Origin: Magallana gigas
Lineage: Eukaryota
NCBI RefSeq assembly: GCF_963853765.1
Contig: NC_088859.1
Location: forward strand, 19,158,001 to 19,222,000
DNA length: 64,000 bases
Direction: 5' to 3'
The notes under the pieces are model-generated. The model had not been told where the DNA came from. It worked only from the letters and a program-made list of their open reading frames with translations, and ran no database searches. The translations under genes and the position numbers were made by a program. Positions 291 to 40,600 of the stretch are shown here, in pieces (the stretch's first letter is position 1; each line of letters begins with the position of its first letter).

Positions 291-473
291 AGAAATTAAC
301 ATACAAAGCAACAGCGACTTCATCCTCAACTTCTGGGATCAATTTTGCAAGGAATGCTGTAGACGAGGACCCTAAGACATACGCTCTAACAAAAAGTGAA
401 AAGAATCCTCTGCTGACAATAACCCTGTCCAATATATTTACAATTAGATGGATATACTTAATTTTACAAGAAG
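291..473 (+). CDS. Gene A, lectin exon 1 (F-type lectin/discoidin-like domain, N-terminal half)
   Basis: Acceptor cattcag|, donor |gtaaaa, 183 nt, phase 1-1. Encodes (E)KLTYKATATSSST...NAVDEDP...LILQE. Same length and phase as the paralogous exon 25107-25289. Confidence 0.85.
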
Positions 474-643
474 GTAAAATATANNNNNNNNNNNNNNNNN
501 NNNNNNNNNNNNNNNNNNNNNNNNNNNNNNNNNNNNNNNNNNNNNNNNNNNNNNNNNNNNNNNNNNNNNNNNNNNNNNNNNNNNNNNNNNNNNNNNNNNN
601 NNNNNNNNNNNNNNNNNNNNNNNNNNNNNNNNNNNNNNNNNAG

Positions 644-838
644 ATTCGTATACCACCTTTTTTGTTTTCATCAAAAACTCAACATTAACTGACGCCACAC
701 TGTGTAACTTTTTCTATGCAACAAGGATTAAGAACACTCGAAATATAATATGCACTGAGACATTAACTGGTGATCAAATTGTCATCACGACAAATTCTAC
801 ATTGGGACGTCTTGTGGTCTTCGAAACACAGGTTTATG
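644..838 (+). CDS. Gene A, lectin exon 2 (C-terminal half)
   Basis: AG at 642-643 directly after an N gap, donor |gtaagt, 195 nt, open frame DSYTTFFVFIKNSTLTDATLCNFFY...ICT...GRLVVFETQVY. It is 9 nt shorter than the gene B exon. The Cys pair and terminal ExxVY fit an F-type lectin fold. Confidence 0.8.
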
Positions 839-1613
839 GTAAGTTAATTTTCCGGGTTTTTTTTACTTTAAAATTCCTAATGGAATGAACGGCGTTTTGC
901 ATGTATTGTTTCTTACTGTTAATTAACTATAATATTTATATTGTTAAACGTAAATGCATGACTTGATGATTACACTGAGTGATTGCGGGAAAGCGATGTT
1001 TAATTACAGTGACATTTTTCTACTACAGCTGTACCAAAATTGCATTTAATACTGACAGGGGTGAAATGAATACAATCTAACAAACAAGAAATCCAATTAT
1101 AAAGTAAAGAACACGATAATAAAAAGGACAGTCTCCAAATACATACTATACATATTTGCTTTTTATTTTTAACTGCCTAACAGTAATTTATCTGCGTTAA
1201 CTTTTATATTCCATTTATGCTTGTATTTACCCTTCATGTATTGTAAACCTTGACCTGTCTCCTTAAAAACTGTGTCGTCTGTTTTTATAATAAAAATAAG
1301 CAATATTTCTAAGTCCTACTATTCAACACATACTTTTTAATTAATTAAATGTTAAAATCGTGCACATAGAGGCAAAATAAAAGGACAAGAGTTTCAGTAA
1401 CTTAGCATTAAAGGTCTGAATAATTATCAAAAAAAAATTGAAAAATCAACAACTACATTTTTGGGGGGATTGAATCCCTTTTTCAAAGAGGGAAACTAAC
1501 ATTTTATAGTGATTGGAAATTGTGGATCTGAAATTCGGAAGTGAATTTTATTTTCAGCCTAGACGAATCTCGCTGAGGTTACACCCGTTCATACTGATTA
1601 ACATTTACATGTA

Positions 1614-1935
1614 TTTTAGCTCAACTGGACCAAAAGTTGTCAGTCTCTGTGTCCGCCTGTCTGTCCGTCTGTCAGTAATTTTTTCATATCTTTTGCTTCT
1701 TTTCTAGAACGTCTGAGCCAAATTAAATTAAACTTGGTACAAGCGACTTATGGGCGGGGATTTTTAACTGTTTTTGAAAAAAGACGAAATCTTTTTTAAT
1801 AGGCAGAAAATCCCAAAACAGTGAAAATAAGGTGTGTCTTAAAAAATTAATCTTCTTCTCAAGAACTACTGCACCAGAAATCCAATTGATACTTACACCA
1901 AAGTTTGTATATATTGTAAAGATTTTAAATTTAAT
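1614..1935 (+). mobile_element. Degenerate Helentron-associated (HINE-like) fragment in the intron; second copy about 27011-27330
   Basis: ttttagctca start, gtccgt/ctgt microsatellite and ttcttctcaagaac monomer motif, as in 22825-24080. Confidence 0.55.
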
Positions 1936-2088
1936 TGGACAATTGTACAAAATTCAAACGTAACGTCAGGCGGGTTGATATGTTTTGACTTTAGCCTGTC
2001 TTGGACGTAAGCAACATTCTTTTTACGATATAAGCTGATTTTTCAGCAAATCAGAAAGCGGGTTACATATGAAATTGAATTCTTACAG

Positions 2089-3153
2089 AGTGTGCTCAAG
2101 GTACCTACGGAGATCTATGTGACCGTGAGTGCAGAAACTGTGTAGACAATAGATGTCATGGGTATACAGGAGTCTGTGAACGTGGCTGCAAGATTGGTTG
2201 GCAGGGGGAAAACTGTGACATACTTTGTAATTTAAATTGTAAGAACAGTAAATGCGACCGCTATACGGGGTTTTGCACAGAAGGATGCAAACCTGATTGG
2301 TACGGAGAAACATGTGATAAACAGTGCCCATCGCAGTGCGAAACGTCTTGTGATCGATCTTTAGGATGTACAAATTGCCAGATAGGCTATAATGGACCGA
2401 ACTGTAATCCATGTGACGGGAATACGTACGGCAAAAACTGTAGCTTGACTTGTCAAAATTGTGATGACTGCAATAATGTTAATGGATGTGGAGTATGCCG
2501 GAACGGCTTTCACGGTGATCTTTGCAATCTTGTATGTCCAAAGCAATGTAGAAATTACATATGCTCTCGGCAATCAGGAGATTGTGTAGATGGATGTAAA
2601 GACGGATATGCAGGTATTAAATGTGAGACACGTTGCGAAGATAGCTGTGCAACTTGCAGTCCCAACGATCTTTGCATCTCTTGTTTAAATGGAAGGTTCG
2701 GTACAAACTGTGAATACCGTTGTCCAGGAACATGCGGCGGAAGTAAAACATGTGACAAGAACAGTGGAGTGTGTTCGGAGTGTAATCCTGGAACGTTTGG
2801 TCCAAATTGTACACAACAATGCAGTAATAAGTGTTTACCTGGTATACCGAGTGTTTGTGACAGAAATGGAACGTGTACCAGTGGATGCGTGGACGGATGG
2901 TTTGGTCCACAATGCGATACACAATGTCCAATTGAAAACTGCAAAAAATGCAACTCCAGCGATTTTTCTTGTGAAATTTGTAATATTGGTTACTATTTAG
3001 ACAATGTACGAGAAATTCGAAAGTGTGTAAAGTGTCCGTCTAGGTATGTTAGTTGTAATAGCGATTTAAGATGCACCGAGTGCATACCACAATTTACTGG
3101 ATACCAGTGTGAAAATGAATGCACCATAAACTGCGTCGATGATCTTTTCAAAT
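2089..3153 (+). CDS. Gene A, large laminin-type/EGF-like repeat exon (MEGF10/SREC-like ectodomain)
   Basis: Acceptor tcttacag|, donor t|gtgagt, 1065 nt, phase 1-1. Uninterrupted Cys-rich repeats (ECAQGTYGDLC...GW.G..C...). Extends the ORF-track ORF 2445-3164 upstream. Confidence 0.9.
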
Positions 3154-4188
3154 GTGAGTATTAAGTATATACACCCAGTTTATAATCTTTTTTAAAATTT
3201 TGTTTTATCTTTACATTTTAGTCCCATCAAACTCATTTATACTTAATGCAAAACGATCGGTTACACGTTGTTACATGTAACTTAGATATAAAAAGTGGAA
3301 TGAACAGTTCTTAACATACACATAAATATGTTAAACGTAAGCATTGACATAATTGATATGTTAAATTAACCGATAACATCTATCTCTCTCTTGAGAAACA
3401 ATGTAAACATATGAAACAAAAACATTTTCATTTAACTCACTATGCTAGCTTTATCTATAAATTATCATGCTGAAATGTCGCAATAATTTACTGAATCGGA
3501 TTCCGTCACGCGTACGGCTATTTGTACGGACCAAAAATGCATTTGACGGTGACAGAACCAGTTTAAGACTAACACTTACGGAGTATCAGATGTAAGTATT
3601 ATTGTACCACTGAAGTGCCCGGTTGGTTTTGACCAATATGAGATGTTAAATAATTTTTTTTATTGAATTAACATTGATTGAATTAAGAAATGTTTTCGAG
3701 TAAATCATACTTACTGTGGAGAACCATTTTGTATTGATATTTTTTCTTGAAAGTTTGTGTAAGTTGCAATAATGATTTATGGCTGTTATTGCCCTGTATA
3801 ACAAGAAAGTTGAACCGGCTAAAATGTAGAGTGTTATTTAAACAACCTTTAGAATATAAGGATTCAGGCAACTCTCAATTCTTGAAATCAAATATGAAAT
3901 TGATATGAAAAGATACCACTTAAAACTGTGTCAATGAACTATTAAATTTATGTATCAAATTTTGCATGTTCCACCATTTTTTAACAATGGAGTTAAGAAA
4001 TTTAAACTGTAATAATTTTATTGTTATTTCAAAAAATATTAATAATATTGATATTATTAAACCGACGTAGACAGTCACGCAGTGAAGCTCAGAATAATAC
4101 TATCAGAGCGTACATGTTGACGAGGAAAAAATTCTAGGTTTACTACATACATGTACATGTATGTGAATTATTATGATAGTAAGTGAGA

Positions 4189-4190
<2 letters not shown>

Positions 4191-4239
<49 letters not shown>
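4191..4239. repeat. (CT)n microsatellite; longer paralog at 29543-29621
   Basis: Seen directly in the sequence. Confidence 0.95.
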
Positions 4240-4242
<3 letters not shown>

Positions 4243-4287
4243 GTATTGTTTAACAGACATTTGCTATTTTTAAAATGATTTTATCAG

Positions 4288-4364
4288 GTTCTGTTTCTAG
4301 TAAATTCCCAGATGAACCGAGAGCAAACGCTTCAGTAAAGCGTTCGGAGAGCGAGAACTTGTAA
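4288..4364 (+). CDS. Candidate short terminal exon of gene A (CSVSSKFPDEPRANASVKRSESENL*)
   Basis: Acceptor ttttatcag|, compatible with phase 1, stop TAA at 4362-4364. The frame is kept in copy B, but the region is near-identical anyway. No transcript evidence. Confidence 0.25.
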
Positions 4365-4636
4365 CTGGTCAGCAGATGCTGGGCGTACATGTGTAAGTTG
4401 GCGGTTGGTTAGTTAATGTAGAACACGCACAAAACGCATGCGTAACGTTAACCCTTAACGAACAGTGAACTTAATAGAAACTATGTATTAGATAAACCGG
4501 ATGCTCTCTTCATATTGAATAAATATTATTATACGAGAATAAAGCTAAGTTATAAGAGAAGTATTTTAGATGTGTAGTGTCACATTAACAAACGCGAAAA
4601 CGAAATATTCTTGAGTTTTCTGAACAGTGAATTTAA

Positions 4637-5275
4637 AGGACCATGGTCACGATTTTGGTCAAATTCTATTTTTCTGTTTTTATTTTTTACAATGCTTTAG
4701 GAATGCATTTCTAATGATCAAATGAAATTTAAGAATCAGTCATTTTGTCATAAGGAAGATACAGAGCTCAAAATTCTTTGTCCTGTAAACAAAGTTCTTG
4801 CCCTATATTTGTTTACACAGTTTCAATATACCAGTAAAATTTTTTTCACGATTTGTCTATCTTCTTAATCATTTTAAGCATTCATAAATAGTTCCTAACG
4901 TTTAACACTTTTATTCTTGGTTTTAAGTTGGCTCTATACACCCACAATTTATTCCAATATTCAATAAAAGACCATAAAACAGATACTTATCAAATAAGAA
5001 AATGATGATAGTGATACTATAGGTATATTTAAAGATTTTTAAAAATGTTTTTTCGTGTTTTTGTAAAATAATTTCTTAAAAGTTAACAATTAACAAATTG
5101 AAAGAAATGTTTTTGTCTTCTGATACAAAACAAAGAATTTTAAGATCCGTTACTCGCTTATAACAAAAAAGAATGGCTCTCAAATTTTGGTTGCCTATCA
5201 AAAATGCCTTACTGAAGCACTGTATACATAAAATTGGAAAAATAATTTTTGACCAAAATTGTGACCATGCCCCTT
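4637..5275. mobile_element. MITE with TTAA flanks, Kolobok-like (copy A)
   Basis: TIRs aggaccatggtcacgattttggtcaaa / tttgaccaaaattgtgaccatgcccct, with TTAA on both sides. Confidence 0.75.
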
Positions 5276-8200
5276 TTAAGGTCGACTTCTGTACAATGTG
5301 CATGCAATGTATAATTGATAATGCAAAGTTTGTTTTAGCCTATGAGAGCTATGTGGCAAAAGAATGATGGTTATTATTACAGGGATGTAAAAAAGATAGA
5401 AAACAGGTTTGTAGCTGAAGAAGGATCATTCACTAGCTACTGCCACTTTTCTTTATTGAAGCATGCTTGTTTTGTAATAGTACATTTTTCATTGCACATT
5501 TATGTTAACCTGATTTTTAAAAATGTCTTTATATTCATGTTGATTTTTATTTATTTTTTCCAGCCCTACCAACATTAATAATTTTAATTTTAATGGTGCA
5601 CCTATTTATCATTTTCCTACACCTATCTGAATAACGTAAATATGGTGATGTGTAAAAATGAATAATTTCTTCAAACATCTCAAAAGAAAGACGGCTGTCT
5701 CGCAAGGTTATTTCTTAGCAAAGCACACAGACAGATACATGAAGGCATCACATTGAAAAGAAAACACCTACAATAAAACAAGCAATCAATGAAAAAAGAC
5801 TTTTGCAGCTATGACAAGATATTTTCCGACGATGCTTTACACTTTTGGTTTTACAGCCTATAAAACTAATAAGTCGCTAGTCAAAGAAAAAAGGAAAGTA
5901 ACCCATATTTATGAATTCATGTCAGCTTTTAGCAGTGAATTCATGTACATGAAAGTGTTCACGGTGCCATTCCTGAGTGTTTATGTTCTGTATTCTTTTA
6001 TTATTAATAGGTAAAACATATAGATGCAAAATAGGCATGAATGATGCTGCTGATATGACAGACATTATCACTGTACATTTAAGGACATCACCAGAGAGAA
6101 GTTCTTATTGAAAAAAAAAACCCGGGATTTTGTAAGTGTTGCTGAAACCAGTAAACATGAAGTAAAGGATAACTTTAATCTTGTTTTTTCACATTCATTC
6201 CAAATTCATACAAATTTTTATAATAATAAAATATGTGTTTTGTAAAATCTTAATTTCGTTCCTTTCTTTTTTATTTTAGAACGAACTTCAGAAACTTTGC
6301 ATGAAGTTAGCTGCCATTTCTTTTGGACAAGTCCCTATTTATTCATTAAGCATAATAAGTTAAATAAGTGAAGGTGGAAACAATAAAACAGGATTCACAT
6401 TTAAAGATAGCATTCTGAGGCGGCATGGGCAGCCAGTGCTGATGATAGACTAAATCAGATTGTCAATTTTTATTGTATCATCCTCCAAACCATACTTAAT
6501 TGGAGACAACTTTTAAAACACTAATACACAAATCTAAGTTCTAATCTTATTGAATGTTTCAAGGATAAAATCCCAGGATTTAAGAACATATGTAATTATC
6601 AAGGAAGAGGATAAAAAAATCAACTGTATCAAATTTTTAGCGAGAAGTATTAGTGTTTTCTGTTTACGAGTAGACTACGATGCAAAAGATGATATGTTTT
6701 TTGTTATCAGTTTAAAGCTGCTATATAAGGAAGAGTTAGCAATCCAGTAGCTTGGCTTGTTGCAGTGATTTGTCATAAATTGAACTTTTTATGTACAAGA
6801 AAGTAATTTCATCTCTTTTGTGCAGAGACTTGTAACATTTTTACCCAGTAAACATATATTAGTAATCTGAAAGTTATTTACGTACGAGAAACCATTGTTG
6901 GCATATTGCACTGTTTTAAGTGAGTCACCATCATGCCCTAAAGTGTACGTATTTCTAGATCAACAAATGTGATAAAAAATTTAGAATTTTTGAATTCATA
7001 TTAATAAAAATGTTTTCAAATGAACATAGGGTTTATGAATGGACTCTATATATAGAGAGAATATATACAGCACGTCCCGTTTTGTAATTTTAACAGTTCA
7101 TAGTTTTGTGTTATACATGTACATTTATCTTTATTATGTACATGTGATTTAAATTTTGTGAATATCGTTTGTGAATTCATGATACTGAATTGATGAAGAA
7201 TCAGTTTAGTGCGAATAATGTCTGTATTACGTTTAGATCTGCAATGAGACTTCAGACGTTTTTTTTGTATATGTATGTATGTGTACTGTTCATTGCAAAA
7301 TCAATTTGTTCTTAATACATGTGTTTATCTATTAAAATGAGACTAAAGGTGTTCATAGAGCAAACGAATAAGGTATATGATGAAAATTATTCTGTGATTT
7401 CTTTTCGAGCACTAATTCATCGAGTGGTGATTATCTAAATATGTTCTGTAGAGCGTAAAAACAAAACTTTTAAAAGTGTTGTTTTTATTCTTAGTTGCAA
7501 CAGGAATATAGTCGATATTCTGACGTAAACAACAGTGTTGCAGATAAGGAAGATCATTATAAGTTCGATATGTATAATTTTGTAACAATTTTAAAATATC
7601 AGTTTTTTTAAATATATTTTCATATATCTTACTGTTTGTCAATTAATTAATAAATATGACAGTGTTTACTATTTTCATTAATATGTAGTAATGAAAAAAT
7701 AGATTTGAAACTTGTTTTGCTTCAATAAATCTGTATGTGGGACAAAAATGACTGTTAAAATCATGTGAAGAATGGGGTATACATACATTATATAGAAACC
7801 GATTAAAAACTTGGCAAATAAAGACAAGCATTTTGGTAACTTTTAATTGAAGAAGATGTATTTTTTATTCAGGTTAAAGCATAATTTAACGAAATAATCT
7901 CAAAGGAACCATCTTTATTGCTTTATTACGAACTATCGTGATTTCTTTTTTCAATAAAAATAAAAAATACACATGTTTAAGTTTTGGATATCCGTAGCAA
8001 TTTAAAGACATGTATAAAAGAATGTTTTCCCCTAACACATTTGATGAAAATGTTGTTTTGCAGTATTATACATTGTTACAAATAATGAAGCAATTTACGA
8101 ATATGATTGCTTTTAAAATCGTTTCCACACAGACGAATATGGCCTATAACTGTTAGTAAGATCAAATTTACATATTATGTAAAAATATATACAAGTGTAC

Positions 8201-9031
8201 AAGATTTCCGCTACATATAAACGATACTATACATAAACCTTAGAAGTGTTTGTTTGCTAAAGACACTCTATGTACACCTATATACACTGTATACACACGT
8301 ATTTAATACATTGAGTTTAAATATGCATGCGCAGTTATAAGCTAAATAAAAGGTGTTTCAAGTGCTTTCAGAACAAGTCATATTGCACTGTACAAATGAT
8401 ACATATATATTAACGCAATTGAAACCTCCATAATAACATCATTCTGATACTTTGGGACGAAAAAATAATGCTATATGTATTTACATGTACTTTGCCATTA
8501 AGAGTATTTTATAAATAAAGGCATCATTCATGTTTTATGGACCGCTTCATGTCGAAATAGCCTTGCTATACACTTTGTGTATGTCATATGTCAACTGTGT
8601 AAACATCGTTTGAAAGCCTGCATATATACTGCGTCAAATCAAATCTGACTTTGGAATTGTATACATATACGACATTGATAAAGCTTTCTTTTTTTACTGA
8701 TGGTGGTGAGATGTGATGGTAACAGGTACAGTATTGGGATAAACAGGACGTGGTCTGATGAGATACACTAAGACTCATCTTCCGTTTCTCTTAGTACTAA
8801 CTCAATTCAGCTAGTATACTTCATCCCCTTTTCCATACAAGTCCGTTGCAGTTTACGGATAAACTTAAGTGGAGGAAAACGGATTTTTCTGAACAAACCC
8901 GTTTTCTTTTCCTTCTTAAACGGAAGTGGGGAAAACCGATCAAAATCATACACTTTCGTATCCTTCAGTTTCCGAAAACACTTTTTTGTTATCTCCTTTA
9001 GAGACTTCGCTAACATTTTCTGTGAATAATC

Positions 9032-9112
9032 TCAATTCTCATTGTAATAGGTAATAAACATATTTTGATAGGCTCATACAGCTTCATTCAGGTAGTAGAA
9101 CATCAATTGCTC
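9032..9112 (-). pseudogene. PTP terminal exon relic, unit A
   Basis: EQLMFYYLNEAV*AYQNMFITYYNEN*, resembling the EQ..F.Y.....Y...F..Y.N end of PTP D2 domains. Acceptor lost. Confidence 0.5.
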
Positions 9113-9161
9113 CAATATATGACAAAGCATAATTATATGATTGCTTTTAACCTGCCTTATA

Positions 9162-9370
9162 CTGTAAATTCCTAATTAAACGCAAGGAATTAATATCAGC
9201 GTAAAATCGCGAGAAGCTCGTCTCGCGAATTTTAAAATCTCGCTTTTAATCATGTAAACTACATGAAACTATGATAAAATTTCGGCATTCGCGAATTCAT
9301 GTTCTCGCGATTTGATGGAGAATCGTTGAATCGCGGAATTAAGTACTCGCGTAAAATAAGGAATCTACAG
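9162..9370. mobile_element. 209-bp MITE with TA TSD (Tc1/mariner-type)
   Basis: TIR ctgtaaattcctaatt / aaataaggaatctacag with TA on both sides. Empty site cttaTAttgc in unit B at about 36846-36855. Confidence 0.9.
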
Positions 9371-9517
9371 TATTGCAAAGCGGTGTATCCTAGTTATGAC
9401 CACATAAGTTAATTGTTTCATGAAGTTCGTACCAATCAATGAGGAACAATTTATTTCAAAACTAATAATTGTGAAACACTGGTTGTTAAATTTGTTAGTA
9501 ACTCTATAAACATGTAC

Positions 9518-9654
9518 CCACCCGAATACTCGCAGATTTGAGCGCGTCCTGTCCGCATCTTTTCAACGGTTTGCAGGAAACTTACCCGATCCATGCGAAT
9601 TCTTTCAATTATGGTGGCAAATGTTCAATACAGACTGCTTTTCTTTGACTATTC
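9518..9654 (-). pseudogene. PTP D2-like exon relic following the HC motif, unit A
   Basis: Acceptor tttaag|, then N..(frameshift)SSLY*TFATIIERIRMDRVSFLQTVEKMRTGRAQI, resembling NG..RSGLYC...IER...EV...Q.V..MR..R.QI. The 3' boundary is approximate. Confidence 0.7.
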
Positions 9655-10075
9655 CTTAAATATTCTTTACAAAAATCAACATTCAATACTACATATATAC
9701 CTACAAGCTTAAATATAGGATAAAATAATTGCACAATTAAGTATAAGGCATTCTTAAGACTACTTTTTATCTGTGTTAGTGGAACATTTGCGAGGTTTGA
9801 GTCAATCCTCTGAATTACTACAATATCAAACCAATGTTTTTATATCTTTAAATACACATGTACGCCTAAGAGTATTTACAATTTTTTGTTAAATTTTGGT
9901 CACTTTGAACTAGTTTAACACTGGGGAATTGCCCCAAAATGTCGCGAAAATATAAGAAAATTATTGCAATTCACGTAATATGAAGATGTTGACTGAAATA
10001 CAAACCACGTATGCATGGTTATGAATTGTTGATAAGTATTTTTAACTGTTGTCAGTTTAAGTTAATCTGTCATAC

Positions 10076-10230
10076 ATACAATGTACAACGATGGTTGGGT
10101 TGTCAAATTGACGTTGCCAGGCATTAACCTCCTCAATTATCTCCAACAAAGGGTCTGGTGATTCTGAAACAGTGGCATCTTCGGACCCGAACTTACACTG
10201 AAATTGTTTCACAATCCTCTCACTTTATGA
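10076..10230 (-). pseudogene. PTP D2-like domain exon relic (WPD-loop to HC region), unit A
   Basis: Minus-strand translation S*SERIVKQFQCKFGSEDATVSESPDPLLEIIEEVNAWQRQFDNPTIVVHCM. 155 nt, tag| acceptor, |gtatg donor, phase 0-2. Matches the layout of the PTP exon that ends inside the HC motif. One premature stop. Confidence 0.8.
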
Positions 10231-10447
10231 CTACACTTATAGAAAATATGATTGCAAAGTTTTGTTTTGTATAGCTGTACATGAACAATTGATTAAAAAG
10301 GGAAACACGCCCAATATAATTGCTTAAAAATTCCATTCCACAGCAAGAGCAAACCTCTTTAAGAATCAATTCATTAACTAACATGGCGACAGAAATTTTC
10401 CTTAAACTGTATATCCTAGTAATGCTTTTGTTTAAAAAATAGATGAA

Positions 10448-12115: not shown

Positions 12116-12644
12116 CACACATTAAAGTACGGGTGAAAAAATTTAACTCTTTGACAATAATTACTTAAGTAAAACGTTTTTGGCGAAAATCGCAAATTTG
12201 ACCCATTATGGGTATAGGCTCCATTTTAATAAATCAATAATAAAAATCAAAATAAACTTATTCTTTAAATAAAAGTACTTTTAGGATGGAGTCAGGACCC
12301 ATTCATACCTGATTTTGCAATTAAGAACAGTAAATGATCCAAGATTTAGGCAAAAAACGATGTGCAGCTTAATTTGGAAACCAATTCATGTCGTGTTTAT
12401 AGAATGAAAGCACAATATTAACTTCCATCGTGAAATTTATAATGAAAACAATGCATACAAGTCAAAAATTAATATTCTAACTTGTATTGAAATTCTTTCG
12501 TCTTCATTGCTCCGAGAGGGGGATATGCAACACCTTTTACGCCCCTCTTCTTTATTTTTTACTTAAAATTGCTCCTACATTCCTCTTTCTTGTGTAAAGG
12601 GTTAAGATGTTTAATAAGTTTATAATAGTAAAGGAACTGTGCTG

Positions 12645-27483: not shown

Positions 27484-28548
27484 AATGTGCTCAAGGTACC
27501 TACGGAGATCTATGTGACCGTGAGTGCAGAAACTGTGTAGACAATATATGTCATGGGTATACAGGAGTCTGTGAACGTGGCTGCAAGATTGGTTGGCAGG
27601 GGGAAAACTGTGACATACCTTGTAATTTTAATTGCAAGAACAGTAAATGCGACCGCTATACGGGGTTTTGCACAGAAGGATGCAAACCTGATTGGTACGG
27701 AGAAACATGTGATAAACAGTGCCCATCGCAGTGCGAAACGTCTTGTGATCGATCTTTAGGATGTACAAATTGCCAGATAGGCTATAATGGACCGAACTGT
27801 AATCCATGTGACGGGAATACGTACGGCAAAAACTGTAGCTTGACTTGTCAAAATTGTGATGACTGCGATAATGTTAATGGATGTGGAGTATGCCGGAACG
27901 GCTTTCACGGTGATCTTTGCAATCTTGTATGTCCAAAGCAATGTAGAAATTACATATGCTCTCGGCAATCAGGAGATTGTGTAGATGGATGTAAAGACGG
28001 ATATGCAGGTATTAAATGTGAGACACGTTGCGAAGATAACTGTGCAACTTGCAGTCCCAACGATCTTTGCATCTCTTGTTTAAATGGAAGGTTCGGTACA
28101 AACTGTGAAAACCGTTGTCCAGGAACATGCGGCGGAAGTAAAACATGTGACAAGAACAGTGGAGTGTGTTCGGAGTGTAATCCTGGAACGTTTGGTCCAA
28201 ATTGTACACAGCAATGCAGTAATAAGTGTTTACCTGGTATACCGAGTGTTTGTGACAGAAATGGAACCTGTACCAGTGGATGCGTGGACGGATGGTTTGG
28301 TCCACAATGCGATACACAATGTCCAATTGAAAACTGCAAAAAATGCAACTCCAGCGATTTTTCTTGTGAAATTTGTAATATTGGTTACTATTTAGACAAT
28401 GTACAAGAAATTCGAAAGTGTGTAAAGTGTCCGTCTAGGTATGTTAGTTGTAATAGCGATTTAAGATGCACCGAGTGCATACCAAAATTTACTGGATACC
28501 AGTGTGAAAATGAATGCACCATAAACTGCGTCGATGATCTTTTCAAAT
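27484..28548 (+). CDS. Gene B exon 5, laminin-type/EGF-like repeat exon
   Basis: Acceptor tcttacag|, donor t|gtgagt, 1065 nt. About 12 substitutions relative to 2089-3153 by manual comparison. Confidence 0.9.
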
Positions 28549-29539
28549 GTGAGTATTAAGTAGATACACCCAGTTTATAATCTTTTTTAAAATTTTGTTT
28601 TATCTTTACATTTTAGTCCCATCAAACTCATTTATACTTAATGCAAAACGATCGGTTACACGTTGTTACATGGAACTTAGATATAATAAGTGGAATGAAC
28701 AGTTCTTAACATACACATAAATATGTTAAACGTAAGCATTGACATAATTGATATGTTAAATTAACCGATAACATCTATCTCTCTCTTGAGAAACAATGTA
28801 AACATATGAAACAAAAACATTTTCATTTAACTCACTATGCTAGCTTTATCTAAAAATTATCATGCTGAAATGTCGCAATAATTTACTGAATCGGATTCCG
28901 TCACGCGTACGGCTATTTGTACGGACCAAAAATGCATTTGACGGTGACAGAACCAGTTTAAGACTAACACTTACGGAGTATCAGATGTAAGTATTATTGT
29001 ACCACTGGTTGGTTTTGACCAATATGAGATGTTAAATATTTTTTTTTATTGAATTAACATTGATTGAATTAAGAAATGTTTTCGAGTAAATCATACTTAC
29101 TGTGGAGAACCATTTTGTATTGATATTTTTTCTTGAAAGTTTGTGTAAGTTGCAATAATGATTTATGGCTGTTTTTGCCCTGAATGGATCACAAGTAAGT
29201 TGAACCGGCTAAAATGTAGAGTATTATTTAAACAACCTTTACAATATAAGGATTCAGGCAACTCTCAATTCTTGAAAACTGTGTCAATGAACTATTAAAT
29301 TTATGTATCAAATTTTGCATGTTCCACCATTTTTTAAACAATGGAGTTAAGAAATTTAAACTGTAATAATTTTATTGTTATTTCAAAAAATATTAATAAT
29401 ATTGATATTATTAAACCGACGTAGACAGTCACGCAGTGAAGCTCAGAATAATACTAACAGAGCGTACATGTTGACGAGGAAAAAATTCTAGGTTTACTAC
29501 ATACATGTACATGTATGTGAATTATTATGATAGTAAGTG

Positions 29540-29624
<85 letters not shown>

Positions 29625-29669: not shown

Positions 29670-29746
29670 GTTCTGTTTCTAGTAAATTCCCAGATGAGCA
29701 GAGAGCAAACGCTTCAGTAAAGCGTTCGGAGAGCGAGAACTTGTAA
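29670..29746 (+). CDS. Candidate short terminal exon of gene B
   Basis: Paralog of 4288-4364, with the same acceptor, frame and stop. Confidence 0.25.
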
Positions 29747-33600: not shown

Positions 33601-34657
33601 TTACTGTTTTTACATATGGCTTTTCGATACATGTGAGATGATATCCGTAAGCTATGATTGAATTAATTGTACCTGATTAGTAATTTTTGTGAAATTAATA
33701 AAAATAAACCTACTTTCATTTTCGATACATTTGCCCGAAATAGCAAATATGAGAGTAAGGTAGTGGACACGCTTTGGCGGATCCAAGTCAGTGGGAGTTA
33801 TCATCAAAATATATGCTTGCAATGAAATAATATTAAATGATTACGTAAACAATAAATAAATTTATAAGAAACTTACTTAGATTATACATAGAAATTAAGA
33901 TTTGACAAATGTTGAATAAAGGAAATAAGGTAATTCGTTTCTTAATTGTGCAATTTTAGTCATAATAGATTGAAGCTAACGAAGCGCGACCTCTCACGAG
34001 AGAATTGAATAGAACTTTCCAGAAGGGGGTAACCAAAAACACGGTTTGACTAATAAACGTCATGGCGAAAAATGTAGGACATGTTCATCATGTATCATGC
34101 ATCATGACTCTTTGGTTAATGAAAGAAAAACCCGGAAGACTTTGACGCCATTTTAATTTTAATGGAATTTATTTTCTAAAATGGGTTGGTCAGGAATGCG
34201 GTTTGACTAATTTACATCATGGCGGAAAGTGTAGGGTGACTTAAACATTGGGCAGATACTTTGGATCTATAACTTTGGTTCAAGATATGCAAATAAATAA
34301 GCATGTCTATATAAATTAAACAGAGAAATTAAAATCGGGGGGGGGGGGGGGGGGGGGGTGACCACCTTTCCGCAAGTTTTTATATGAAAATCTCATTTGG
34401 GATTGTTATATATTGTGAAATTTGATCTAAAGAACACAATTTAATGACGTCCTAAATACCCACTAACTGGTTTAAAAAAATTCTTTGTTATCTTTTTCCA
34501 ATCAGCTGCAACAAAAAGAATTGAGGCCANNNNNNNNNNNNNNNNNNNNNNNNNNNNNNNNNNNNNNNNNNNNNNNNNNNNNNNNNNNNNNNNNNNNNNN
34601 NNNNNNNNNNNNNNNNNNNNNNNNNNNNNNNNNNNNNNNNNNNNNNNNNNNNNNNNN

Positions 34658-35694
34658 ACCCGTCCCTTCTTCAGGACAACAAAATAAAAACTACATAAGA
34701 AAGAAAAAAACATCTACAAAACTAGCACTAAACTAAACTAAATAATATATATAAACTAGATAATGTTTAAACACCGGATCAAAACGTGGCAGCTACATCT
34801 TTATATTTAAGAATTCGAGCCCGAGAAAGAAAAATCCCGTCCGACGCAGCGGACGGTCTGTGAAGAAGTGCTGAAAGATAACGCGAACGAATTAACTTGC
34901 TAATTGGGGGTTGCTGTTAATTAAGTTGTACTAGTAAGATAATTCGTAGTGAAAGTTTGTAGGGAAGATTGGCCCTGTAAAAGACCACATAAATAATTAT
35001 GAATGTAAAAACTAATGGAAGTGAAATAAAGAAAAAGAACAAAACCGATTAAGGAAATAGCTAATAATTTGAATAAATAACATGATTAATAGTTTGTACA
35101 TGGACCGAAAAAGATGAAGATGGTGATATTGCTACGAAAACAAATCAGTACTTAGTTGATGTTCATTTTGGTGAAGTCACTTAATTTGTTAATGCCGTCA
35201 GGGCGGAATGACTTCAGTCTATGCATCCAATTTTTTTTTTTTTTTTTTAATTTTTTCTCTCCGCATCTGTCCAGTTAGGGTTGTGATCAATGACCAAAAC
35301 CATCATGTCCTCCCATTTGTGACCATCTAAATTAAAATGTTCCCCGACGGGTTCTTTAATTTTCTTAGTTTTGATGGTGGAACGATGATTATTGATGCGC
35401 CTGCAGATGTAGATGTAGCTGCCACGTTTTGATCCGGTGTTTAAACATTATCTAGTTTTTATACATTATTTAGTTTAGTTTAGTGCTAGTTTTGTAGATG
35501 TTTTTCTTCTTTCTTATGTAGTTTTTATTTTGTTGTCCTGAAGAAGGGACGGGTTGGCCCGAAAATTTGACAATATTTTACTTTATTGTTCGTGTCGTTG
35601 GTTATTTTTAGTGCTTTTTTATATCTCATCTTATAACCGTGTATCTTTTGATCCGACACTTTAGATAACGAGTGTTGTTGGTTTGCTAGTGCTT

Positions 35695-35729
<35 letters not shown>
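34658..35729 (-). mobile_element. 5'-truncated Penelope-like element: GIY-YIG 3' fragment with direct and inverted pseudo-LTR
   Basis: Minus strand 35152-35404 encodes RRINNHRSTIKTKKIKEPVGEHFNLDGHKWEDMMVLVIDHNPNWTDAERK...WMHRLKSFRPDGINK. 34658-34800 and 35405-35552 form an inverted repeat pair. Ends in (TA)n and an N gap. Confidence 0.85.
35531..35575 (+). ncRNA. Minimal type I hammerhead ribozyme motif in the PLE pseudo-LTR
   Basis: Stem I tgttgtc/gacaata, core CTGAAGA (35538-35544), stem II GGG/CCC, GAAA (35561-35564), palindromic stem III AATT, predicted cleavage after 35568. Confidence 0.7.
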
Positions 35730-35731
<2 letters not shown>

Positions 35732-36726
35732 TGCTTAACAATTTAGTATTATTCAATTAATGTGTAAAGTGTTAATTGCCTCGCTTGGGCGGGATATCAT
35801 TTAGTATTAGGTAAAATTAAGTATGTGTCGAATTCCCTCTATATATAAACGTTAAATGGAAAGGAACTTGTAAGTTGTTAGAACCTGTTAGAACCTGTTT
35901 TTAATCCTTTTTTAATCAATAAAATATGTTCAAAACAATAAACGTTGCTATTTATCTACCTTACACGGATATGTTTGCTAAAGGCACTCTATGTACCCTT
36001 AAACATCACCGTTTACACACTTCATAATATAATGAGTGTCATCGTGGATGTGCAGTTATCAACCAAAGAAAATGGGGTTTAGCGTGCTTTCAGAACAATT
36101 CATATTGCAGTGTACAAATGTTACAAAATAACTCAAATGCAATCTCCATAATATCACTCTGATAATCTGGGACGAAAAAAGAATAATGCTAGCTTTTTTA
36201 CCATTAAGAGTATTTTATATAAAGCCATCATTCATGTTTCATGGACAACTTCATGTCGAAATGGATATTCTATACACTTTATGTATGTCATAAGTCAACT
36301 GTTAACACCGTTTGAAATTCTGCATGTATATTGCGTCAAATCGAAACTGACTTTGGAATTGTATACATGAAAGACAATGATCAAGATTTCTGTTTTTACC
36401 AAAGATGGTGAGATGATAACAAGACCATTATTGGGATAAACAGGACGTGGTCTGATAAGATAAACTAAGACTCACTTTCCGTTTCTTTAAGTACTAACAC
36501 AATTCAGCTTGTATACTTTTTCTTTTCCAAACTAGCCCGTTGCCTTTCACGGATAAACTTAAGTGGAGGAAAACAGGTTTTTCTTAACAAACCCGGTGTT
36601 TTCTTTAACTTTGAAACGGAAGTTGGGAAAACCGATCAAAATTATACACTTTCGTATACTTTAATTTCCAAAAACAGATTTTGTTATCTCCTCTAGCGAT
36701 TTTGCTCACATTTTCTGTGAATAATT

Positions 36727-36807
36727 TCAATTCTCATTGGAATAGGTATAAAATAAATTTTAATAGGCTCATGAAGCTTCATAAATGTATCAATAAATCA
36801 ATTGTTC
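36727..36807 (-). pseudogene. PTP terminal exon relic, unit B
   Basis: Homologous to 9032-9112 (EQLIY*YIYEAS*AY*). Confidence 0.4.
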
Positions 36808-36992
36808 AAATAAATGAAAGAGTATATATGATTGTTTTAACATTGCTTATATTGCAAAACGGTGTATCATAGTTATGATCATGTAAGTTAATTGTTTATT
36901 TGAAGATCATTTCAATCATTAAAGAACAATTTTATTTCAAAATTAATAATTCTAAATCACCGCTGGTAAAATTTGCTAGTAACTTTATATAC

Positions 36993-37130
36993 CCAGCCGA
37001 ATACTCACTTATTTGAAGGCGCCGTGGCCGCATCTGTACAATAGTTTGCAGGAAACTTAATTCTTGTTCCACGAATTCTTTTAATTATGGTGGCAAATGC
37101 CCAGTGAAGACCATTTTCTCTGTACGATTC
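36993..37130 (-). pseudogene. PTP D2-like exon relic following the HC motif, unit B
   Basis: NRTE(fs)NGLHWAFATIIKRIR(fs)EQELSFLQTIVQMRPRRLQI. Confidence 0.7.
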
Positions 37131-37514
37131 CTAAAATGTTCTTTACAAAAATCATTACTCGATACTATATAATATACACTTTCAAGCTTAATATAGTTAA
37201 ATATTTGCACAAGTGTAAGGCATTCTTTTTATTTGCGTTGTTTGAAAATTTGCGAAGTTTGAGTCTATCCTCTTTAAACCAGTGTTTTTATCTCTTTAAT
37301 AAACATGTATGCCTTAGAGTATACACAATTTTTGGTTAGAATTCGGTCACTATGAACTAGATTACATATAACACTGGGAAATTGCAGAAAAATTTCGCAA
37401 AAAAACTTCTTACTTTAACGATTCATGTAATATGAAGATGTAGACTAAAATACGAAGTACGTAGTTGTTGACTAAGTATTTTAACTGATGTCAGTTTAAG
37501 TTAATCAGTCATAC

Positions 37515-37667
37515 ATGCTATGTACAACGATGGTTGGGTTGTGAACTTGATGTTGCCAGGCATTGGCCTCCTCAATCATCTCCAGCATAGGATCTGGTGA
37601 TTCTGGAACAACGGCATCCTCGGACCAGAACTTACACTGAAATTGTTTCGCAGGCCTTAGTTAATGA
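37515..37667 (-). pseudogene. PTP D2-like exon relic, unit B
   Basis: AKQFQCKFWSEDAVVPESPDPMLEMIEEANAWQHQVHNPTIVVHSM. 153 nt, i.e. the 155-nt exon with a 2-nt deletion. Confidence 0.8.
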
Positions 37668-40600
37668 CTAGAGTTACCAAACAGATTTATCAAAGACAAA
37701 ACATTGCTTACGTAGATGTCAAATGATCAAAAAATTAAACAACAAAATACTATATATGAGTTTTATGGATTATTGGTGATAATGGCCACGGCTGCTTGAT
37801 ATTAAAATGAATACAGAATACAAGGTGAACCCTGGGATCAGCTGTTCACCCGTAAAAAACTATACCTCATTCATTAATACTTTAACATATTATATAGACC
37901 ATTAAAAATCCATTTGAGCACTACTGGTAAGCTGAAATATTCGCTGGCAAGCTCAGCAGTTGTCCCCACAGATAAGGCAGCCGTGACGAATGGGGTCTAC
38001 TATTATGGTGGCAGCTTGATCCTGAAAAATTTAATCTGCAGAGCCAGAAAATACCGAACTATGAAATTGTATACAATTTAAATAATATAAAATCCAATAG
38101 GGCCACCGGATATATGAAGGGGAGAGGTGGGTGGGTCAAATTCAAAGCAGCGACTGATGGGTTGTTCTGCAGGGAGTCTGTAACGTCACAATTTCAAGCT
38201 AATATCCCAAAGTGCACGCGATGACCAGCTAATATGCGTAAAGGTCCCCAAGGGTTGGAGGGTTATCATTATGGTGAAAATATTTAGCTTTGATAAACCG
38301 ATTTAACCTTGACAAGTTAAATCCAATTATTTTTATTTGCAAAGTATTGTTTTGTACAGCTGTACTTGCACAGTTGATTAAAAACGGAAACACTCCAGAA
38401 AAAAATTGCTTAAAAATTACATTCCACAACAAGAGCAATTAAAACTCTTTAAAAATAGAATCAAAAACAAATTGGGCTACAGTGATTTTCCTCAAACTGT
38501 ATATCTCAATATTGTTGAAATAAACAGATAAATACAAAGATTATGAAAGGAGACGTTACTTAAGTTGGACATGCTTGATATATTCAGTCTACTTTTGGTT
38601 AGTAAAATGTAAACATAGCAGATATTATGAGAAAAAAAACGTTAGTTTATTATTACTCAGTATCTTGAACATACAAACTACCGAACAGGTGTTTCCTTTC
38701 TGCTGGTAAAAGGTTAAAGACAACTACACCAAAACTACAATTACTGACCAATAATCCCTGGCAGTCTTCAGAATTAATAGTTACTAGATGATATCCCACA
38801 CAAGCGCGGGAATTAACAAATTACACTTTAAAATAATACGACACTAACTATGAAGAACCAATTTTTTTTTCATTTTTGGAAATACTGAGTCCACAAATTT
38901 TCTTAATTGCTTTCTTGACTTATTCTTTGAAATCGAAATAAACAAAAATGCATGGCTGAATATTAAGATATGCGAACAGGGATGAAATATTTAAACTAAA
39001 ATGGATGACTATACATGCCGTATGTCTCTATTGCCACCGACCGTAAAAAACCAAACTCTTCTTATTTTATTTCAAACCACTGGATGGGTATTTCTTTTTC
39101 TAAATGATGTTTTTTAGGTCAAATTTCACAATAACTTTTATCATTTTTTTATCACTTTATCATTAATATGTCGTGTTAAAAAAGTATGAAAATATAAAAA
39201 CGCTAGTGTATGCATATTTATTTGAACATTTTAAACTTATGAAGTGTCTGCCCAATGGTTAACCTGTAAACTCGCCCTTCATTTTCCGCCGCTTGGTGTT
39301 TCATAGGACCGACGATATCCAAAAATAAGCATTCAATGCTTATATTTATATTCATACTGATGTCTGTTTGTATCAAATATATTAGTATCGTTGCTTCAGA
39401 GCCATTATATACGTTTCAGTCAGGGTTATGAAACATACATGGAACAGCAATATTAACACTTTTTTTTAGTTTGCTTCCGTGACTAAAAATATAGTGTCAG
39501 ATACTTTGTAGAGAAAAATCTTTTTTATCAAGAAGTAAAAATAATTTAATGATTAATTTTAAAAGTATATAACATATTGGTTAAGCAAAGTAAAACGTTT
39601 TATTAATCTTACAAAAATATGTAAACTCAAAACACGTGATGACGTTTATATCCATCTCATCGCGCATTAATTAGCAAAGTGTATTAATAAAAAATTGAAC
39701 GTCGCAGAATTCAAATGCAAACATAAGGGAAAATTTACACTGAAAGTAACTATGTTTCAATAATTATGTAACAGGTATAAAGCAGTTTTAGTTTACCGAC
39801 ATCATATCCTACGTGTTGAAATACTAAAGGTCTAAGCAGTTAATTACTCTGGTGTAGGCGTTTCGTAGTTTAATTGGCGAAATGTCTTAATTTATAAGTA
39901 TAAGTGTTACAATCAAAAAAACGTAAGATTTTCATATCGTATCCTACTTTGGTTTTTGTTAAAACAACTCTCTTAATATGTTTCTTTTCATTTCACCATT
40001 TAGCGGTTTTTATATTAAACGATAATATTCAGAACAGAGTAATCGTTCGTATTTAACCACATGTTGAGTGGTTGAAAATATAAACATTGCGTGGCTTAAT
40101 AAAATCATATCCATGTTTGATGCTTGTGGTGTGCAATACCATGTTTTAAAAAAAATAATGGATGTCTGTTTTGCATAAAAACTTTGTATATCGAGTCATT
40201 TTCAAGGAAGATTTTGCATAAAATAGTATAGTCTGTTTCACTATTGATGCTATTACTAGGTCAGGCGCGGATCGAAAACTAATCCTCAGGGAGGATATCT
40301 ACTTAGCATGTTAATTGTTGCAACAGCAGACAAAAACTATTTTTTGTATTTTTTTATTTATTTCTAGAACACATTTTATCCACCTATTAATGAAGATAAA
40401 GTTTAAAATCAATAAACCTCTAGATTTAATAATTGACTACTATGGTACCTATGGTAACTCATGACTTACAGATTCATAGTAAACCCTCTAACCTACTGCG
40501 CTACGCTGTTAGGTGACAATATTGGGAAAGAACCAACTTATTTAATTAATTACGGTACGTCTCGTTTAATTGTTTATTTTGATAAACAATACATCACAAC

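What the first reader, a model, noticed from the sequence alone, without database searches (positions are those of the whole stretch)
291..38790. Repeat unit pairs a sense lectin-EGF ectodomain gene with an antisense, broken PTP tail: possible receptor-to-soluble-decoy conversion
Seen: units A and B each have a + strand lectin+EGF gene with no transmembrane exon I could find. About 6-8 kb downstream, PTP D2-like exons lie on the minus strand in correct internal order (10076-10230, 9518-9654, 9032-9112 in A; 37515-37667, 36993-37130, 36727-36807 in B), none annotated in the ORF track. Established: bivalves have expanded lectin/EGF receptors that end in a TM segment plus tandem PTP domains. Inference: an inversion of the 3' half of such a receptor gene, or capture of a convergent neighbour, cut off the signalling tail. 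That would leave a secreted pattern-recognition or decoy ectodomain, which was then tandemly amplified.
Basis: partly seen in the sequence, partly recalled or inferred. Interest (0 to 1): 0.78.

Follow-up and report, generated by a model that had tools for sequence, protein, structure and literature searches.

The report
Oyster receptor turned secreted protein
In the Pacific oyster, copies of a lectin-EGF tyrosine-phosphatase receptor gene lost their membrane and phosphatase parts, whose decayed remains lie backwards just downstream, and now make secreted ectodomain-only proteins; this is a tidy but fairly ordinary case of gene-family evolution.

Summary
The window is Magallana (Crassostrea) gigas, contig C7:19158001-19222000. 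It contains two of at least four tandem units, which I, A, B and C. Each unit carries a + strand gene: signal peptide, Cys-rich stretch, galactose-binding-like domain, EGF repeats. RefSeq models of 546-552 aa end at a stop right after the EGF exon.

That stop comes from read-through of the old phase-1 5' splice site (A: AAA T|GTGAGTATTAA). RNA contigs show no splice leaving the EGF exon. No TM exon is detectable in any unit.

About 6-10 kb downstream, on the minus strand, lies a decayed 3' fragment of a phosphatase gene. It keeps the D1 P-loop exon, the D1 last exon and the last three D2 exons plus 3' flank, with stops and frameshifts.

An intact paralogue, D, with lectin-EGF-TM-D1-D2 all on the + strand, lies about 60 kb past the window. 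The relics form one clade that groups with D's tail (moderate support). Orthologous full-length receptors exist in Ostrea, Saccostrea and C. virginica.

So "receptor turned into a secreted ectodomain, then amplified" is well supported. Inversion versus inverted partial duplication is unresolved. The decoy function is untested. An older RefSeq model joins an A-type head to D's tail, which is a caveat.

The parts
287..473 (+). Gene A exon 3, first half of the galactose-binding-like ('lectin') domain. Exons 1-2 (signal peptide, Cys-rich) lie upstream of the window at about -3160 and -2340.
   Evidence: P0152 aa 63-123 maps here at 98%. Donor GT at 474-475.
484..641 (.). Assembly gap, entirely inside the short intron 474-643 of gene A.
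   Evidence: Both splice sites are read outside the gap. Unit B has a 75-nt intron at the same place.
644..838 (+). Gene A exon 4, second half of the lectin-like domain.
   Evidence: P0152 aa 124-188 maps at 100%. RNA junction 837/838 to 2088/2089, GT..AG, in X2 and X5.
2089..3164 (+). Gene A EGF-repeat exon, coding part (358 codons, 66 Cys), ending at stop TAA 3162-3164.
   Evidence: Covered by RNA contigs.
3153..3164 (+). Former exon end (3153, phase 1) and the disused 5' splice site GTGAGT (3154-3159). These are read through to give ...C-E-Y-stop.
   Evidence: unit D has AG|GTACGT and splices to its TM exon. The alpha-type copy in unit C has T|GTAAGTATTAG, giving CKY-stop. No RNA junction starts here.
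3165..6641 (+). Long spliced 3' UTR of gene A/B-type transcripts. The exon continues to 4392. Introns are 4393-6010 (alternative acceptor 5339) and 6132-6279. The transcript continues beyond 6641.
   Evidence: GT..AG junctions and strand-specific depth. Splice sites read.
8258..9040 (-). Relic A: homologue of the 3' UTR/flank of the intact receptor gene D.
   Evidence: D141286-141892 matches 8879-8258 on the minus strand at 71%.
9041..9154 (-). Relic A: last D2 exon, with an in-frame stop (EAV*AY).
   Evidence: E 1e-7.
9538..9648 (-). Relic A: D2 exon after the catalytic-site Cys, with a stop (LY*) and a 1-codon deletion. Unit 0 and C. angulata share the same lesions.
10075..10221 (-). Relic A: D2 'QFQ...IVVHC' exon. 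The frame is open and it is 86% identical to D.
   Evidence: PF00102 E 3e-4.
12562..13240 (-). Relic A: two remnants of the last D1 exon (13169-13240 and 12562-12654).
   Evidence: 13169-13240, E 0.003; 12562-12654, E 6e-5. One search shows the alignment for 12562-12654.
13395..13508 (-). Relic A: D1 P-loop exon. SAGVGRTGTF is degraded to SVDVGRTKTF, with a stop.
   Evidence: E 1e-9.
18995..20479 (+). Gene B 5' exons: signal-peptide exon at about 18995-19052, an alternative first exon at about 19543-19590 inside a MITE copy, and the Cys-rich exon 20354-20479.
25100..25567 (+). Gene B lectin-like exons (about 25100-25289 and 25365-25567).
27484..28559 (+). Gene B EGF exon coding part with the same read-through stop. 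It is 97.8% identical in protein to A.
34530..34657 (.). Assembly gap inside a B-specific insertion of the spacer. No exon is affected.
   Evidence: unit C joins the equivalents of B 34217 and 35841 directly.
36006..37657 (-). Relic B: 3' flank, last D2 exon (36736-36903, 3 stops), D2 exon (37013-37121, frameshift) and QFQ exon (37514-37657, HC changed to HS).
46872..53332 (-). Relic B: D1 P-loop exon in two copies (47593-47694, 53201-53332) and D1 last-exon remnants (46872-46931, 52369-52464, with stops). These are spread out by a local duplication.
59640..60341 (+). First two coding exons (signal peptide, Cys-rich) of the next unit (C). The rest of unit C lies beyond the window.

Best explanation
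The window shows two units of a Magallana-lineage tandem array. The array derives from a lectin-like/EGF receptor-type tyrosine phosphatase: signal peptide, Cys-rich stretch, galactose-binding-like domain, EGF repeats, TM, active D1, inactive D2.

In one ancestral copy, a rearrangement broke the gene in the intron after the big EGF exon. The 3' part of a phosphatase tail, from the D1 P-loop exon to the 3' flank, ended up on the opposite strand. I think this was most simply an inversion of the gene's own 3' half followed by deletions.

With no downstream exon to splice to, the transcript reads through the old 5' splice site. A stop follows two or three codons later. The product is a secreted ectodomain-only protein of about 525 residues after signal cleavage.

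The tail decayed into a pseudogene fragment. The whole unit (head gene, spacer, backward relic) was then amplified and shuffled by unequal crossing-over and gene conversion.

Shown here: the anatomy, homology, read-through stop, expression, single origin of the relic and conserved Cys framework.

Inferred: the inversion as the mechanism, secretion, and any role as a soluble binder or decoy.
For: Array and units.

Intact paralogue D, with all exons open and in sense.

RefSeq models of 546-552 aa end at the post-EGF stop, in M. gigas and in C. angulata.

The stop is a read-through of a phase-1 donor that is conserved with D.

RNA shows the lectin-to-EGF junction, no junction leaving the EGF exon, and + strand coverage continuing past the stop.

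No TM is present by hydropathy or by exon search.

The relic exons are colinear on the minus strand with stops and frameshifts, and share the lesion SVDVGRTKTF in 0, A and B.

The relics are monophyletic (100/99) and group with M. gigas D (88/92), apart from C. virginica, Saccostrea and Ostrea tails.

The heads of the short genes and of D fall in one Crassostrea/Magallana clade whose outgroups are full-length receptors.

The same head-spacer-backward-relic layout, with the same stops, occurs in an independent C. angulata assembly.

All 66 of 66 Cys are conserved across 19% protein divergence, with dN/dS about 0.5.
Against: The relic lacks everything 5' of the D1 P-loop exon and the first four D2 exons. 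A plain inversion therefore needs extra deletions.

The 5-kb spacer between the EGF exon and the relic has no counterpart in D. No inverted repeats flank the relic.

Relic introns still align to D's introns at 74-80%. Head introns of the short genes gave no blastn match to D's. Head and tail may therefore have different histories relative to the present D.

An older RefSeq model (P0169) joins gene-A-type leader and lectin exons and an alpha-type long EGF exon to D's tail.

The stop lies upstream of two 3' UTR introns, which could expose the mRNA to decay.

Pfam does not recognise the lectin-like domain above threshold.
Confidence: 0.72

Rival explanations
1. Inverted partial duplication or convergent neighbour. 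The backward relic is not the short gene's own tail. It is a separate copy of a D-like gene, or of its 3' 5 kb, that landed or lay tail-to-tail downstream. The short gene's own TM/PTP exons were simply deleted.
For: The relic starts abruptly about 40 nt upstream of the D1 P-loop exon. It ends about 700 nt past D's stop codon, like a discrete fragment. No TM-to-WPD exons are seen on either strand. Relic introns align to D, whereas head introns do not. This suggests different ages for head and tail.
Against: It needs more events: an inverted duplication plus loss of the gene's own tail, and loss of the neighbour's head. No minus-strand lectin or EGF exon exists anywhere in the 194 kb examined. 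Head sequences evolve 4-5 times faster than tails. The array is also riddled with conversion tracts. Unequal alignability is therefore weak evidence.
Confidence: 0.3
2. The short genes are transcribed but functionless remnants: truncated duplicates on their way to decay, with mRNAs that are decay targets.
For: The stop codon lies upstream of two spliced 3' UTR introns. dN/dS is 0.5 in the EGF exon and 0.88 in the lectin-like domain between A and B. Unit C is a patched chimera.
Against: All 66 cysteines are kept despite about 68 amino-acid changes between units 0 and A. By my own calculation the chance expectation is about 12 lost, P about 1e-6. Open frames are kept in all three short units and in two C. 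angulata genes. Steady RNA coverage is seen in several independent studies.
Confidence: 0.13
3. The heads still serve a receptor. In some haplotypes, or by long-range splicing, an alpha-type head is joined to D's TM/PTP exons, as in the older RefSeq model P0169. Under this reading the short form is only one isoform or allele.
For: In P0169, exons 1-2 are 100% and the lectin domain 98.4% identical to gene A. Its tail is the D locus at 97-100%. Other older-assembly proteins (P0156, P0157) also match no unit here, so copy content differs between individuals.
Against: P0169's EGF exon is absent from this assembly; the best match is 79%. In the RNA runs laid, the only strongly supported junction from lectin exon 2 goes to the short EGF exon (a minor 783-to-2097 joint in one contig lands in the same exon), and nothing leaves that exon before the stop. 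Such multi-unit models are a common artefact of homology-guided prediction across tandem arrays (my own knowledge).
Confidence: 0.12
4. Assembly error: the minus-strand orientation of the phosphatase exons is an artefact.
For: Two gaps lie within the finding's span.
Against: Four units in this assembly have the same layout. An independent C. angulata assembly has it too, with the same lesions. The gaps lie in an intron and in a unit-specific insertion, away from the head-relic junction.
Confidence: 0.02

Closest known systems
Ostreid lectin-like/EGF receptor-type tyrosine phosphatases. Examples: M. gigas unit D / LOC105342354 (P0169), Saccostrea echinata 'RPTP kappa-like' (P0004), Ostrea edulis LOC125671627 (P0166), C. 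virginica P0171-P0173.
   Same: Same leader, Cys-rich stretch, galactose-binding-like domain and EGF exon, with the same phase-1 exon end. The relic exons are 83-88% identical in protein to D's D2 exon.
   Different: The window's genes have no TM and no phosphatase domains in sense. Their tail is a backward, broken fragment.
MEGF10 / Draper / CED-1 family (the RefSeq name given to genes A and B).
   Same: Many tightly spaced EGF-type repeats.
   Different: No TM, no cytoplasmic signalling tail, and no EMI domain hit. The nearest relatives are phosphatase receptors, not MEGF10. The name reflects EGF-repeat similarity only.
Ostrea edulis 'protein draper-like' P0161 (797 aa).
   Same: A duplicate of the same receptor family that has lost its phosphatase domains. 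It is sister to the Ostrea full-length receptor. This is a parallel, independent tail loss.
   Different: It keeps the TM and a roughly 45-residue tail. No phosphatase relic lies within 10 kb downstream.
Soluble receptor paralogues or decoys made by truncating a receptor gene (general class; named from my own knowledge, not tested here).
   Same: The ectodomain is retained, and the anchor and signalling parts are lost.
   Different: Here the truncation is genomic, by rearrangement plus splice-donor read-through, rather than by alternative splicing or shedding. Ligand competition is not shown.

Membership tests
Classical receptor-type PTP (Pfam PF00102, tandem D1-D2): the minus-strand relic | Sequence homology to the PTP domain | tested here: met
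   PF00102 E 3e-4, 20.8 bits for one exon, against a cut-off of 20.9. tblastn to D exons gives E 5e-26. DNA homology gives E 1e-145.
Classical receptor-type PTP (Pfam PF00102, tandem D1-D2): the minus-strand relic | Intact HC(X)5R P-loop in D1 | tested here: not met
   SAGVGRTG is degraded to SVDVGRTK (0, A) or NVDVCRTK (B). The exon carrying the ...HC residues is absent, and A has a stop.
Classical receptor-type PTP (Pfam PF00102, tandem D1-D2): the minus-strand relic | Complete open reading frame with WPD-loop exon, TM and ectodomain on the same strand | tested here: not met
   No WPD, D1 N-terminal, juxtamembrane, TM or D2 N-terminal exons are detectable. Stops or frameshifts occur in the D2 exons of all four copies.
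Lectin-like/EGF RPTP family (D-type): genes A and B | Homologous leader, galactose-binding-like domain and EGF exon | tested here: met
   tblastn and DNA matches to D. The heads fall in one Crassostrea/Magallana clade, with full-length receptors as outgroups.
Lectin-like/EGF RPTP family (D-type): genes A and B | TM segment and tandem phosphatase domains in the same transcript | tested here: not met
   RefSeq models end after the EGF exon. There is no TM by hydropathy. No RNA junction leaves the EGF exon.
MEGF10/Draper/CED-1 | EGF repeats plus TM plus cytoplasmic signalling tail (N-terminal EMI domain) | tested here: not met
   No TM or tail. No Pfam family reaches threshold, and none of the weak hits is EMI.
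F5/8 type C / galactose-binding-like domain ('lectin') | Profile match above the curated cut-off | tested here: inconclusive
   PF22633 and PF00754 score E 0.004-0.02, 16-18 bits, against a cut-off of about 28, in four of five family members. A Pecten relative carries both families in precomputed hits.
F5/8 type C / galactose-binding-like domain ('lectin') | Beta-sandwich fold like discoidin, CBM32 or F-type lectin | tested here: inconclusive
   The model is weak (pLDDT 59.5, pTM 0.56, all-beta). The best Foldseek rows are APC10, muskelin discoidin, CBM32 and the lectinolysin F-type lectin at E 0.003-0.03 and TM 0.4-0.5, mixed with Ig domains. Sugar binding is not testable here.

The most novel reading that the evidence does not exclude
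The array could be a two-way regulatory module for the neighbouring receptor D.

First, the secreted heads might compete for its ligands. In the older model P0169, gene A's lectin-like domain is 98% identical to that of a full-length receptor.

Second, the + strand head transcripts have a spliced 3' UTR that runs toward the backward relic. If they extend across it, they would carry sequence antisense to D's mRNA. Relics B and C keep exact matches of 38-55 nt to D's D2 exon. That could let the pseudogene tail regulate the parent gene at the RNA level.
Probability: 0.06. Interest if true: 0.75.

Novelty: new member of a known kind. Interest (0 to 1): 0.38.

Why it matters
This is a clean, datable example of how an invertebrate immune-type or adhesion-type receptor family makes secreted paralogues. 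The steps are a genomic break in one intron, a stop supplied by the disused splice donor, a fossil tail left alongside, and then tandem amplification with a fast-changing binding domain.

It corrects the database name: these are not MEGF10 orthologues. It points to an unannotated pseudogene fragment in each unit. It also flags the locus as structurally polymorphic between oyster haplotypes. The same family lost its phosphatase tail independently in Ostrea.

It does not open a new kind of biology.

Tried and rejected
- A shared boundary at D134116 between units A and C first looked like an inversion breakpoint. It is a roughly 472-bp MITE with thousands of near-identical copies, so I dropped it.
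- I first read the short EGF exon as 'fused by deletion to a terminal mini-exon'. One search showed instead that the C-terminal C-E/K-Y-stop is read-through of the old donor.
- I searched for a TM or juxtamembrane remnant in the 5-kb spacer by tblastn and by Smith-Waterman against shuffles. Nothing exceeded chance.
- I looked for inverted repeats flanking the relic and found none.
- The Ostrea edulis short-tail gene has no phosphatase relic within 10 kb.
- The Saccostrea P0004 locus gave no DNA because the gene range is too long.
- Pecten outgroups were too divergent for the head tree.
- Pfam gave no family at E 0.01 or better for the whole proteins. The domain fold model was of low confidence.
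- Literature searches found nothing specific to this locus or family.
- Earlier-findings look-ups were empty.
- The intronless PTP gene on C2 was used only as a first probe.

Full report
**Identity of the window**

The window is G000:C7:19158001-19222000 of a 564-Mb, 29-contig genome. The contig length of 53,672,946 bp equals that recorded for Magallana gigas RefSeq proteins encoded here. I fetched 40 kb upstream and 90 kb downstream. Coordinates outside 1-64000 are given on the window's scale.

**Checking the observation**

A self-comparison shows that 169-10233 and 24984-37670 are duplicates. Identity falls from 97-98% around the EGF exon to 77-80% at the phosphatase relic. Both units carry two + strand exons of a galactose-binding-like domain and one large EGF exon. 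That exon is 361 codons from stop to stop, with 66 Cys.

These are the RefSeq proteins P0152 (gene A, 546 aa) and P0153/P0151 (gene B, 549/546 aa). RefSeq names them 'multiple EGF-like domains protein 10'. Both end exactly at the stop after the EGF exon. Hydropathy shows an N-terminal signal and no TM. The TM of the full-length relative scores 3.3, against at most 1.6 here.

- A: 10075-10221, 9538-9648, 9041-9154.
- B: 37514-37657, 37013-37121, 36736-36903.

**The gaps**

Gap 484-641 lies inside a short intron. Its donor (474-475) and acceptor (642-643) are both read, and the phase fits. Unit B has a 75-nt intron at the same place. Gap 34530-34657 lies in a B-specific insertion of the spacer. 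Neither gap touches a claim made here, and I filled neither.

**What surrounds it**

The D2 exon has five copies, all within 155 kb. Four are on the minus strand, each downstream of a lectin-EGF head. These are unit 0 (upstream of the window), A, B, and C (downstream of the window).

The fifth copy is on the + strand, in a complete gene that I call D, at 122728-141185 on the window's scale. D has a leader, lectin-like exons and a 594-codon EGF open frame. Its TM exon lies at 131952-132056. After juxtamembrane exons come an active D1 (WPD, HCSAGVGRTG) and an inactive D2 (HCMNGAKKSG). All exons are open.

Full-length orthologues of about 1415-1430 aa exist in Saccostrea, Ostrea edulis and C. virginica. 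The receptor architecture is therefore ancestral for oysters.

**How the short genes end**

D's EGF exon ends in phase 1 at ...ECTKI-A|GTACGT and splices to the TM exon. In A, B and 0 the homologous exon end reads ...TTC AAA T|GTGAGT ATT AAG. The consensus donor is still there but is read through, giving C-E-Y-stop. In C. angulata, P0159 ends ...CTECKY-stop in the same way, at the end of a long EGF exon.

RNA supports this (two RNA-seq contig sets and two poly(A) raw-read runs):
- It shows the lectin-to-EGF junction.
- It shows no junction leaving the EGF exon.
- Plus-strand coverage continues past the stop to 4392.
- Canonical junctions follow at 4392 to 6011 (or 5339) and at 6131 to 6280, and the transcript continues beyond 6641.

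The mRNA therefore encodes the short protein and has a long, spliced 3' UTR heading toward the relic. Reads at 95% identity or more cannot separate A from B.

**The relic**

Using D's exons as probes, unit A holds the following on the minus strand, in gene order:
- the D1 P-loop exon (13395-13508, with a stop);
- remnants of the last D1 exon (13169-13240, 12562-12654);
- the last three D2 exons;
- about 700 nt of 3' flank, down to 8258.

The TM, juxtamembrane, D1 N-terminal and WPD exons are not detectable on either strand. Nor are the first four D2 exons.

Units 0 and A share the same stops. C. angulata also has the LY* and EAV* stops in the two D2 exons that L033 reaches. B and C share other lesions. 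Units 0, A and B all carry the degraded P-loop SVDV(G/C)RTKTF. The tail was therefore already dead before the unit multiplied.

In a rooted tree the four relics form one clade (100/99). That clade groups with M. gigas D at 88/92, apart from C. virginica, Saccostrea and Ostrea. Relic introns and 3' flank are 74-80% identical to D's. The D2 QFQ exon is 87-91% identical.

**History of the heads**

The head tree gives Ostrea, then Saccostrea, then an unresolved three-way split. The three lineages are:
- the short-gene lineage, which I call alpha (0, A, B, and C. angulata P0001 and P0159);
- the D/C lineage, which I call delta;
- the C. virginica receptors.

C. angulata's P0159 keeps a long EGF exon yet already has the read-through stop, the alpha-type spacer and the backward relic. 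The truncation therefore came first. The loss of the last ~200 codons of the EGF exon in 0, A and B came later.

Unit C is a patchwork. A 2.8-kb D-like tract (83% identical) is followed by a MITE piece. Next come the last 21 codons of a P0159-like exon and then alpha-type spacer and relic.

Units are mosaics in general:
- A is B-like in the EGF exon (dS 0.02).
- A resembles unit 0 from the EGF exon through the relic (93-99% DNA identity).
- The lectin-like domains differ much more: dS is 0.22 between A and B, and above 1 against unit 0.

This is what unequal crossing-over and gene conversion do to tandem arrays.

**Are the short genes alive?**

All 66 cysteines are conserved between units 0, A and B, despite 19% protein divergence between 0 and A/B. 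dN/dS is about 0.5. The frames are open in every unit and in C. angulata, and RNA is present in several studies. I read them as functional secreted proteins with a variable binding domain. I did not test secretion, glycan binding or any decoy action.

**Mechanism of the rearrangement**

A two-break inversion of the gene's own 3' part is the most economical account. It explains the break right after the EGF exon, the tail-to-tail layout and the single origin. It still needs later deletions, and I found no breakpoint signature.

An inverted partial duplicate of a D-like tail fits the discrete ends of the relic. It also fits the observation that relic introns align to D while head introns do not. 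I cannot decide between the two with one genome and no outgroup synteny.

An apparent shared breakpoint turned out to be a MITE with thousands of copies.

**Caveat**

P0169 is an older C. gigas RefSeq model (LOC105342354, 1416 aa). It joins exons identical or 98% identical to gene A's leader and lectin exons to an alpha-type long EGF exon, and then to D's TM and phosphatase exons. That EGF exon does not exist in this assembly; the best match is 79%.

There are two readings. It may be a prediction stitched across the array. Or it may be another haplotype in which an alpha-type head is still coupled to the phosphatase tail. Other older-assembly proteins (P0156, P0157) also match no unit here. 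Copy content therefore clearly varies between individuals.

**Comparison with what is known, and verdict**

The genes are annotated, but under a name (MEGF10) that they do not earn. They lack TM, tail and EMI domain, and their nearest relatives are phosphatase receptors. The relics appear to be unannotated, because no protein model covers them.

The phenomenon is a receptor duplicate truncated to a secreted ectodomain, with a fossil of its lost part alongside. That is a known kind of event. The Ostrea short-tail gene P0161 is sister to the Ostrea receptor and shows a parallel loss.

The case is well documented and tidy rather than surprising. I score interest at 0.38.

Noticed in passing
window 19160-19656; also L030:116-606: A MITE of about 472 bp with 38-bp terminal inverted repeats. 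It has thousands of 99-100% identical copies genome-wide (3682 first-look candidates), which implies recent activity. The older copy in the window supplies the alternative first coding exon of gene B isoform X4 (MLDISPFIDFNCISFT, about 19543-19590).
   Followed up: partly
window 290-838 versus 25100-25567: The lectin-like domain is the most variable part of the units. Between A and B, dS is 0.22 and dN/dS is 0.88. The adjoining EGF exon is nearly identical (dS 0.02). Unit 0's domain is saturated against both (dS above 1). This points to a conversion boundary, diversification of the binding domain, or both.
   Followed up: partly
window 2089-3164 versus unit 0 (about -20262 to -19180): The EGF exon differs more between units 0 and A (89% DNA identity, dS 0.20) than the flanking 3' UTR/intron does (about 95%). 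This suggests conversion from other paralogues or faster change within the exon.
   Followed up: no
P0169 (older C. gigas RefSeq, LOC105342354): This model joins gene-A-type exons 1-4 and an alpha-type long EGF exon that is absent from this assembly to the TM/PTP exons of unit D. It is either a chimeric prediction or a structurally different haplotype.
   Followed up: partly
L032 (Ostrea edulis, P0161 locus): The Ostrea 'draper-like' gene has lectin-like domain, EGF repeats, TM and a roughly 45-aa tail. It is sister to the Ostrea full-length phosphatase receptor P0166 on the same chromosome. This is an independent loss of the phosphatase tail, with no relic within 10 kb.
   Followed up: partly
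window 37514-37657 and unit C (about 85446-85589): Relics B and C keep exact matches of 55 and 38 nt to D's D2 'QFQ' exon, although overall identity is about 75%. This exon is 87-91% identical to D in all four relics. Possible causes are conversion with D, constraint on D's side only, or chance.
   Followed up: partly
window 1842-2041, 4642-4841, 5242-5441: RNA depth here is 10-20 times that of the neighbouring exons, with many loose ends. These are repeat-derived sequences transcribed elsewhere in the genome. 4632-4787 and 5124-5279 are an inverted pair.
   Followed up: no
window 38898-47600 versus 49377-53142: A local duplication inside unit B's spacer doubles the D1 P-loop exon remnant.
   Followed up: partly
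window 62674-63700 (minus strand): Two open frames look like a retrotransposon integrase, with an H2C2 zinc-binding motif. They lie in the long intron of unit C's gene.
   Followed up: no
about 99,630-106,700 on the window's scale (L026-L027, outside the window): A satellite array with a period of about 182 bp, in both orientations, lies between units C and D.
   Followed up: no
G000:C7:19349602-19350249 (minus strand, outside the window): A further EGF-exon fragment of the family, 52% identical to P0169's exon, with two stops. It lies about 50 kb beyond unit D.
   Followed up: no
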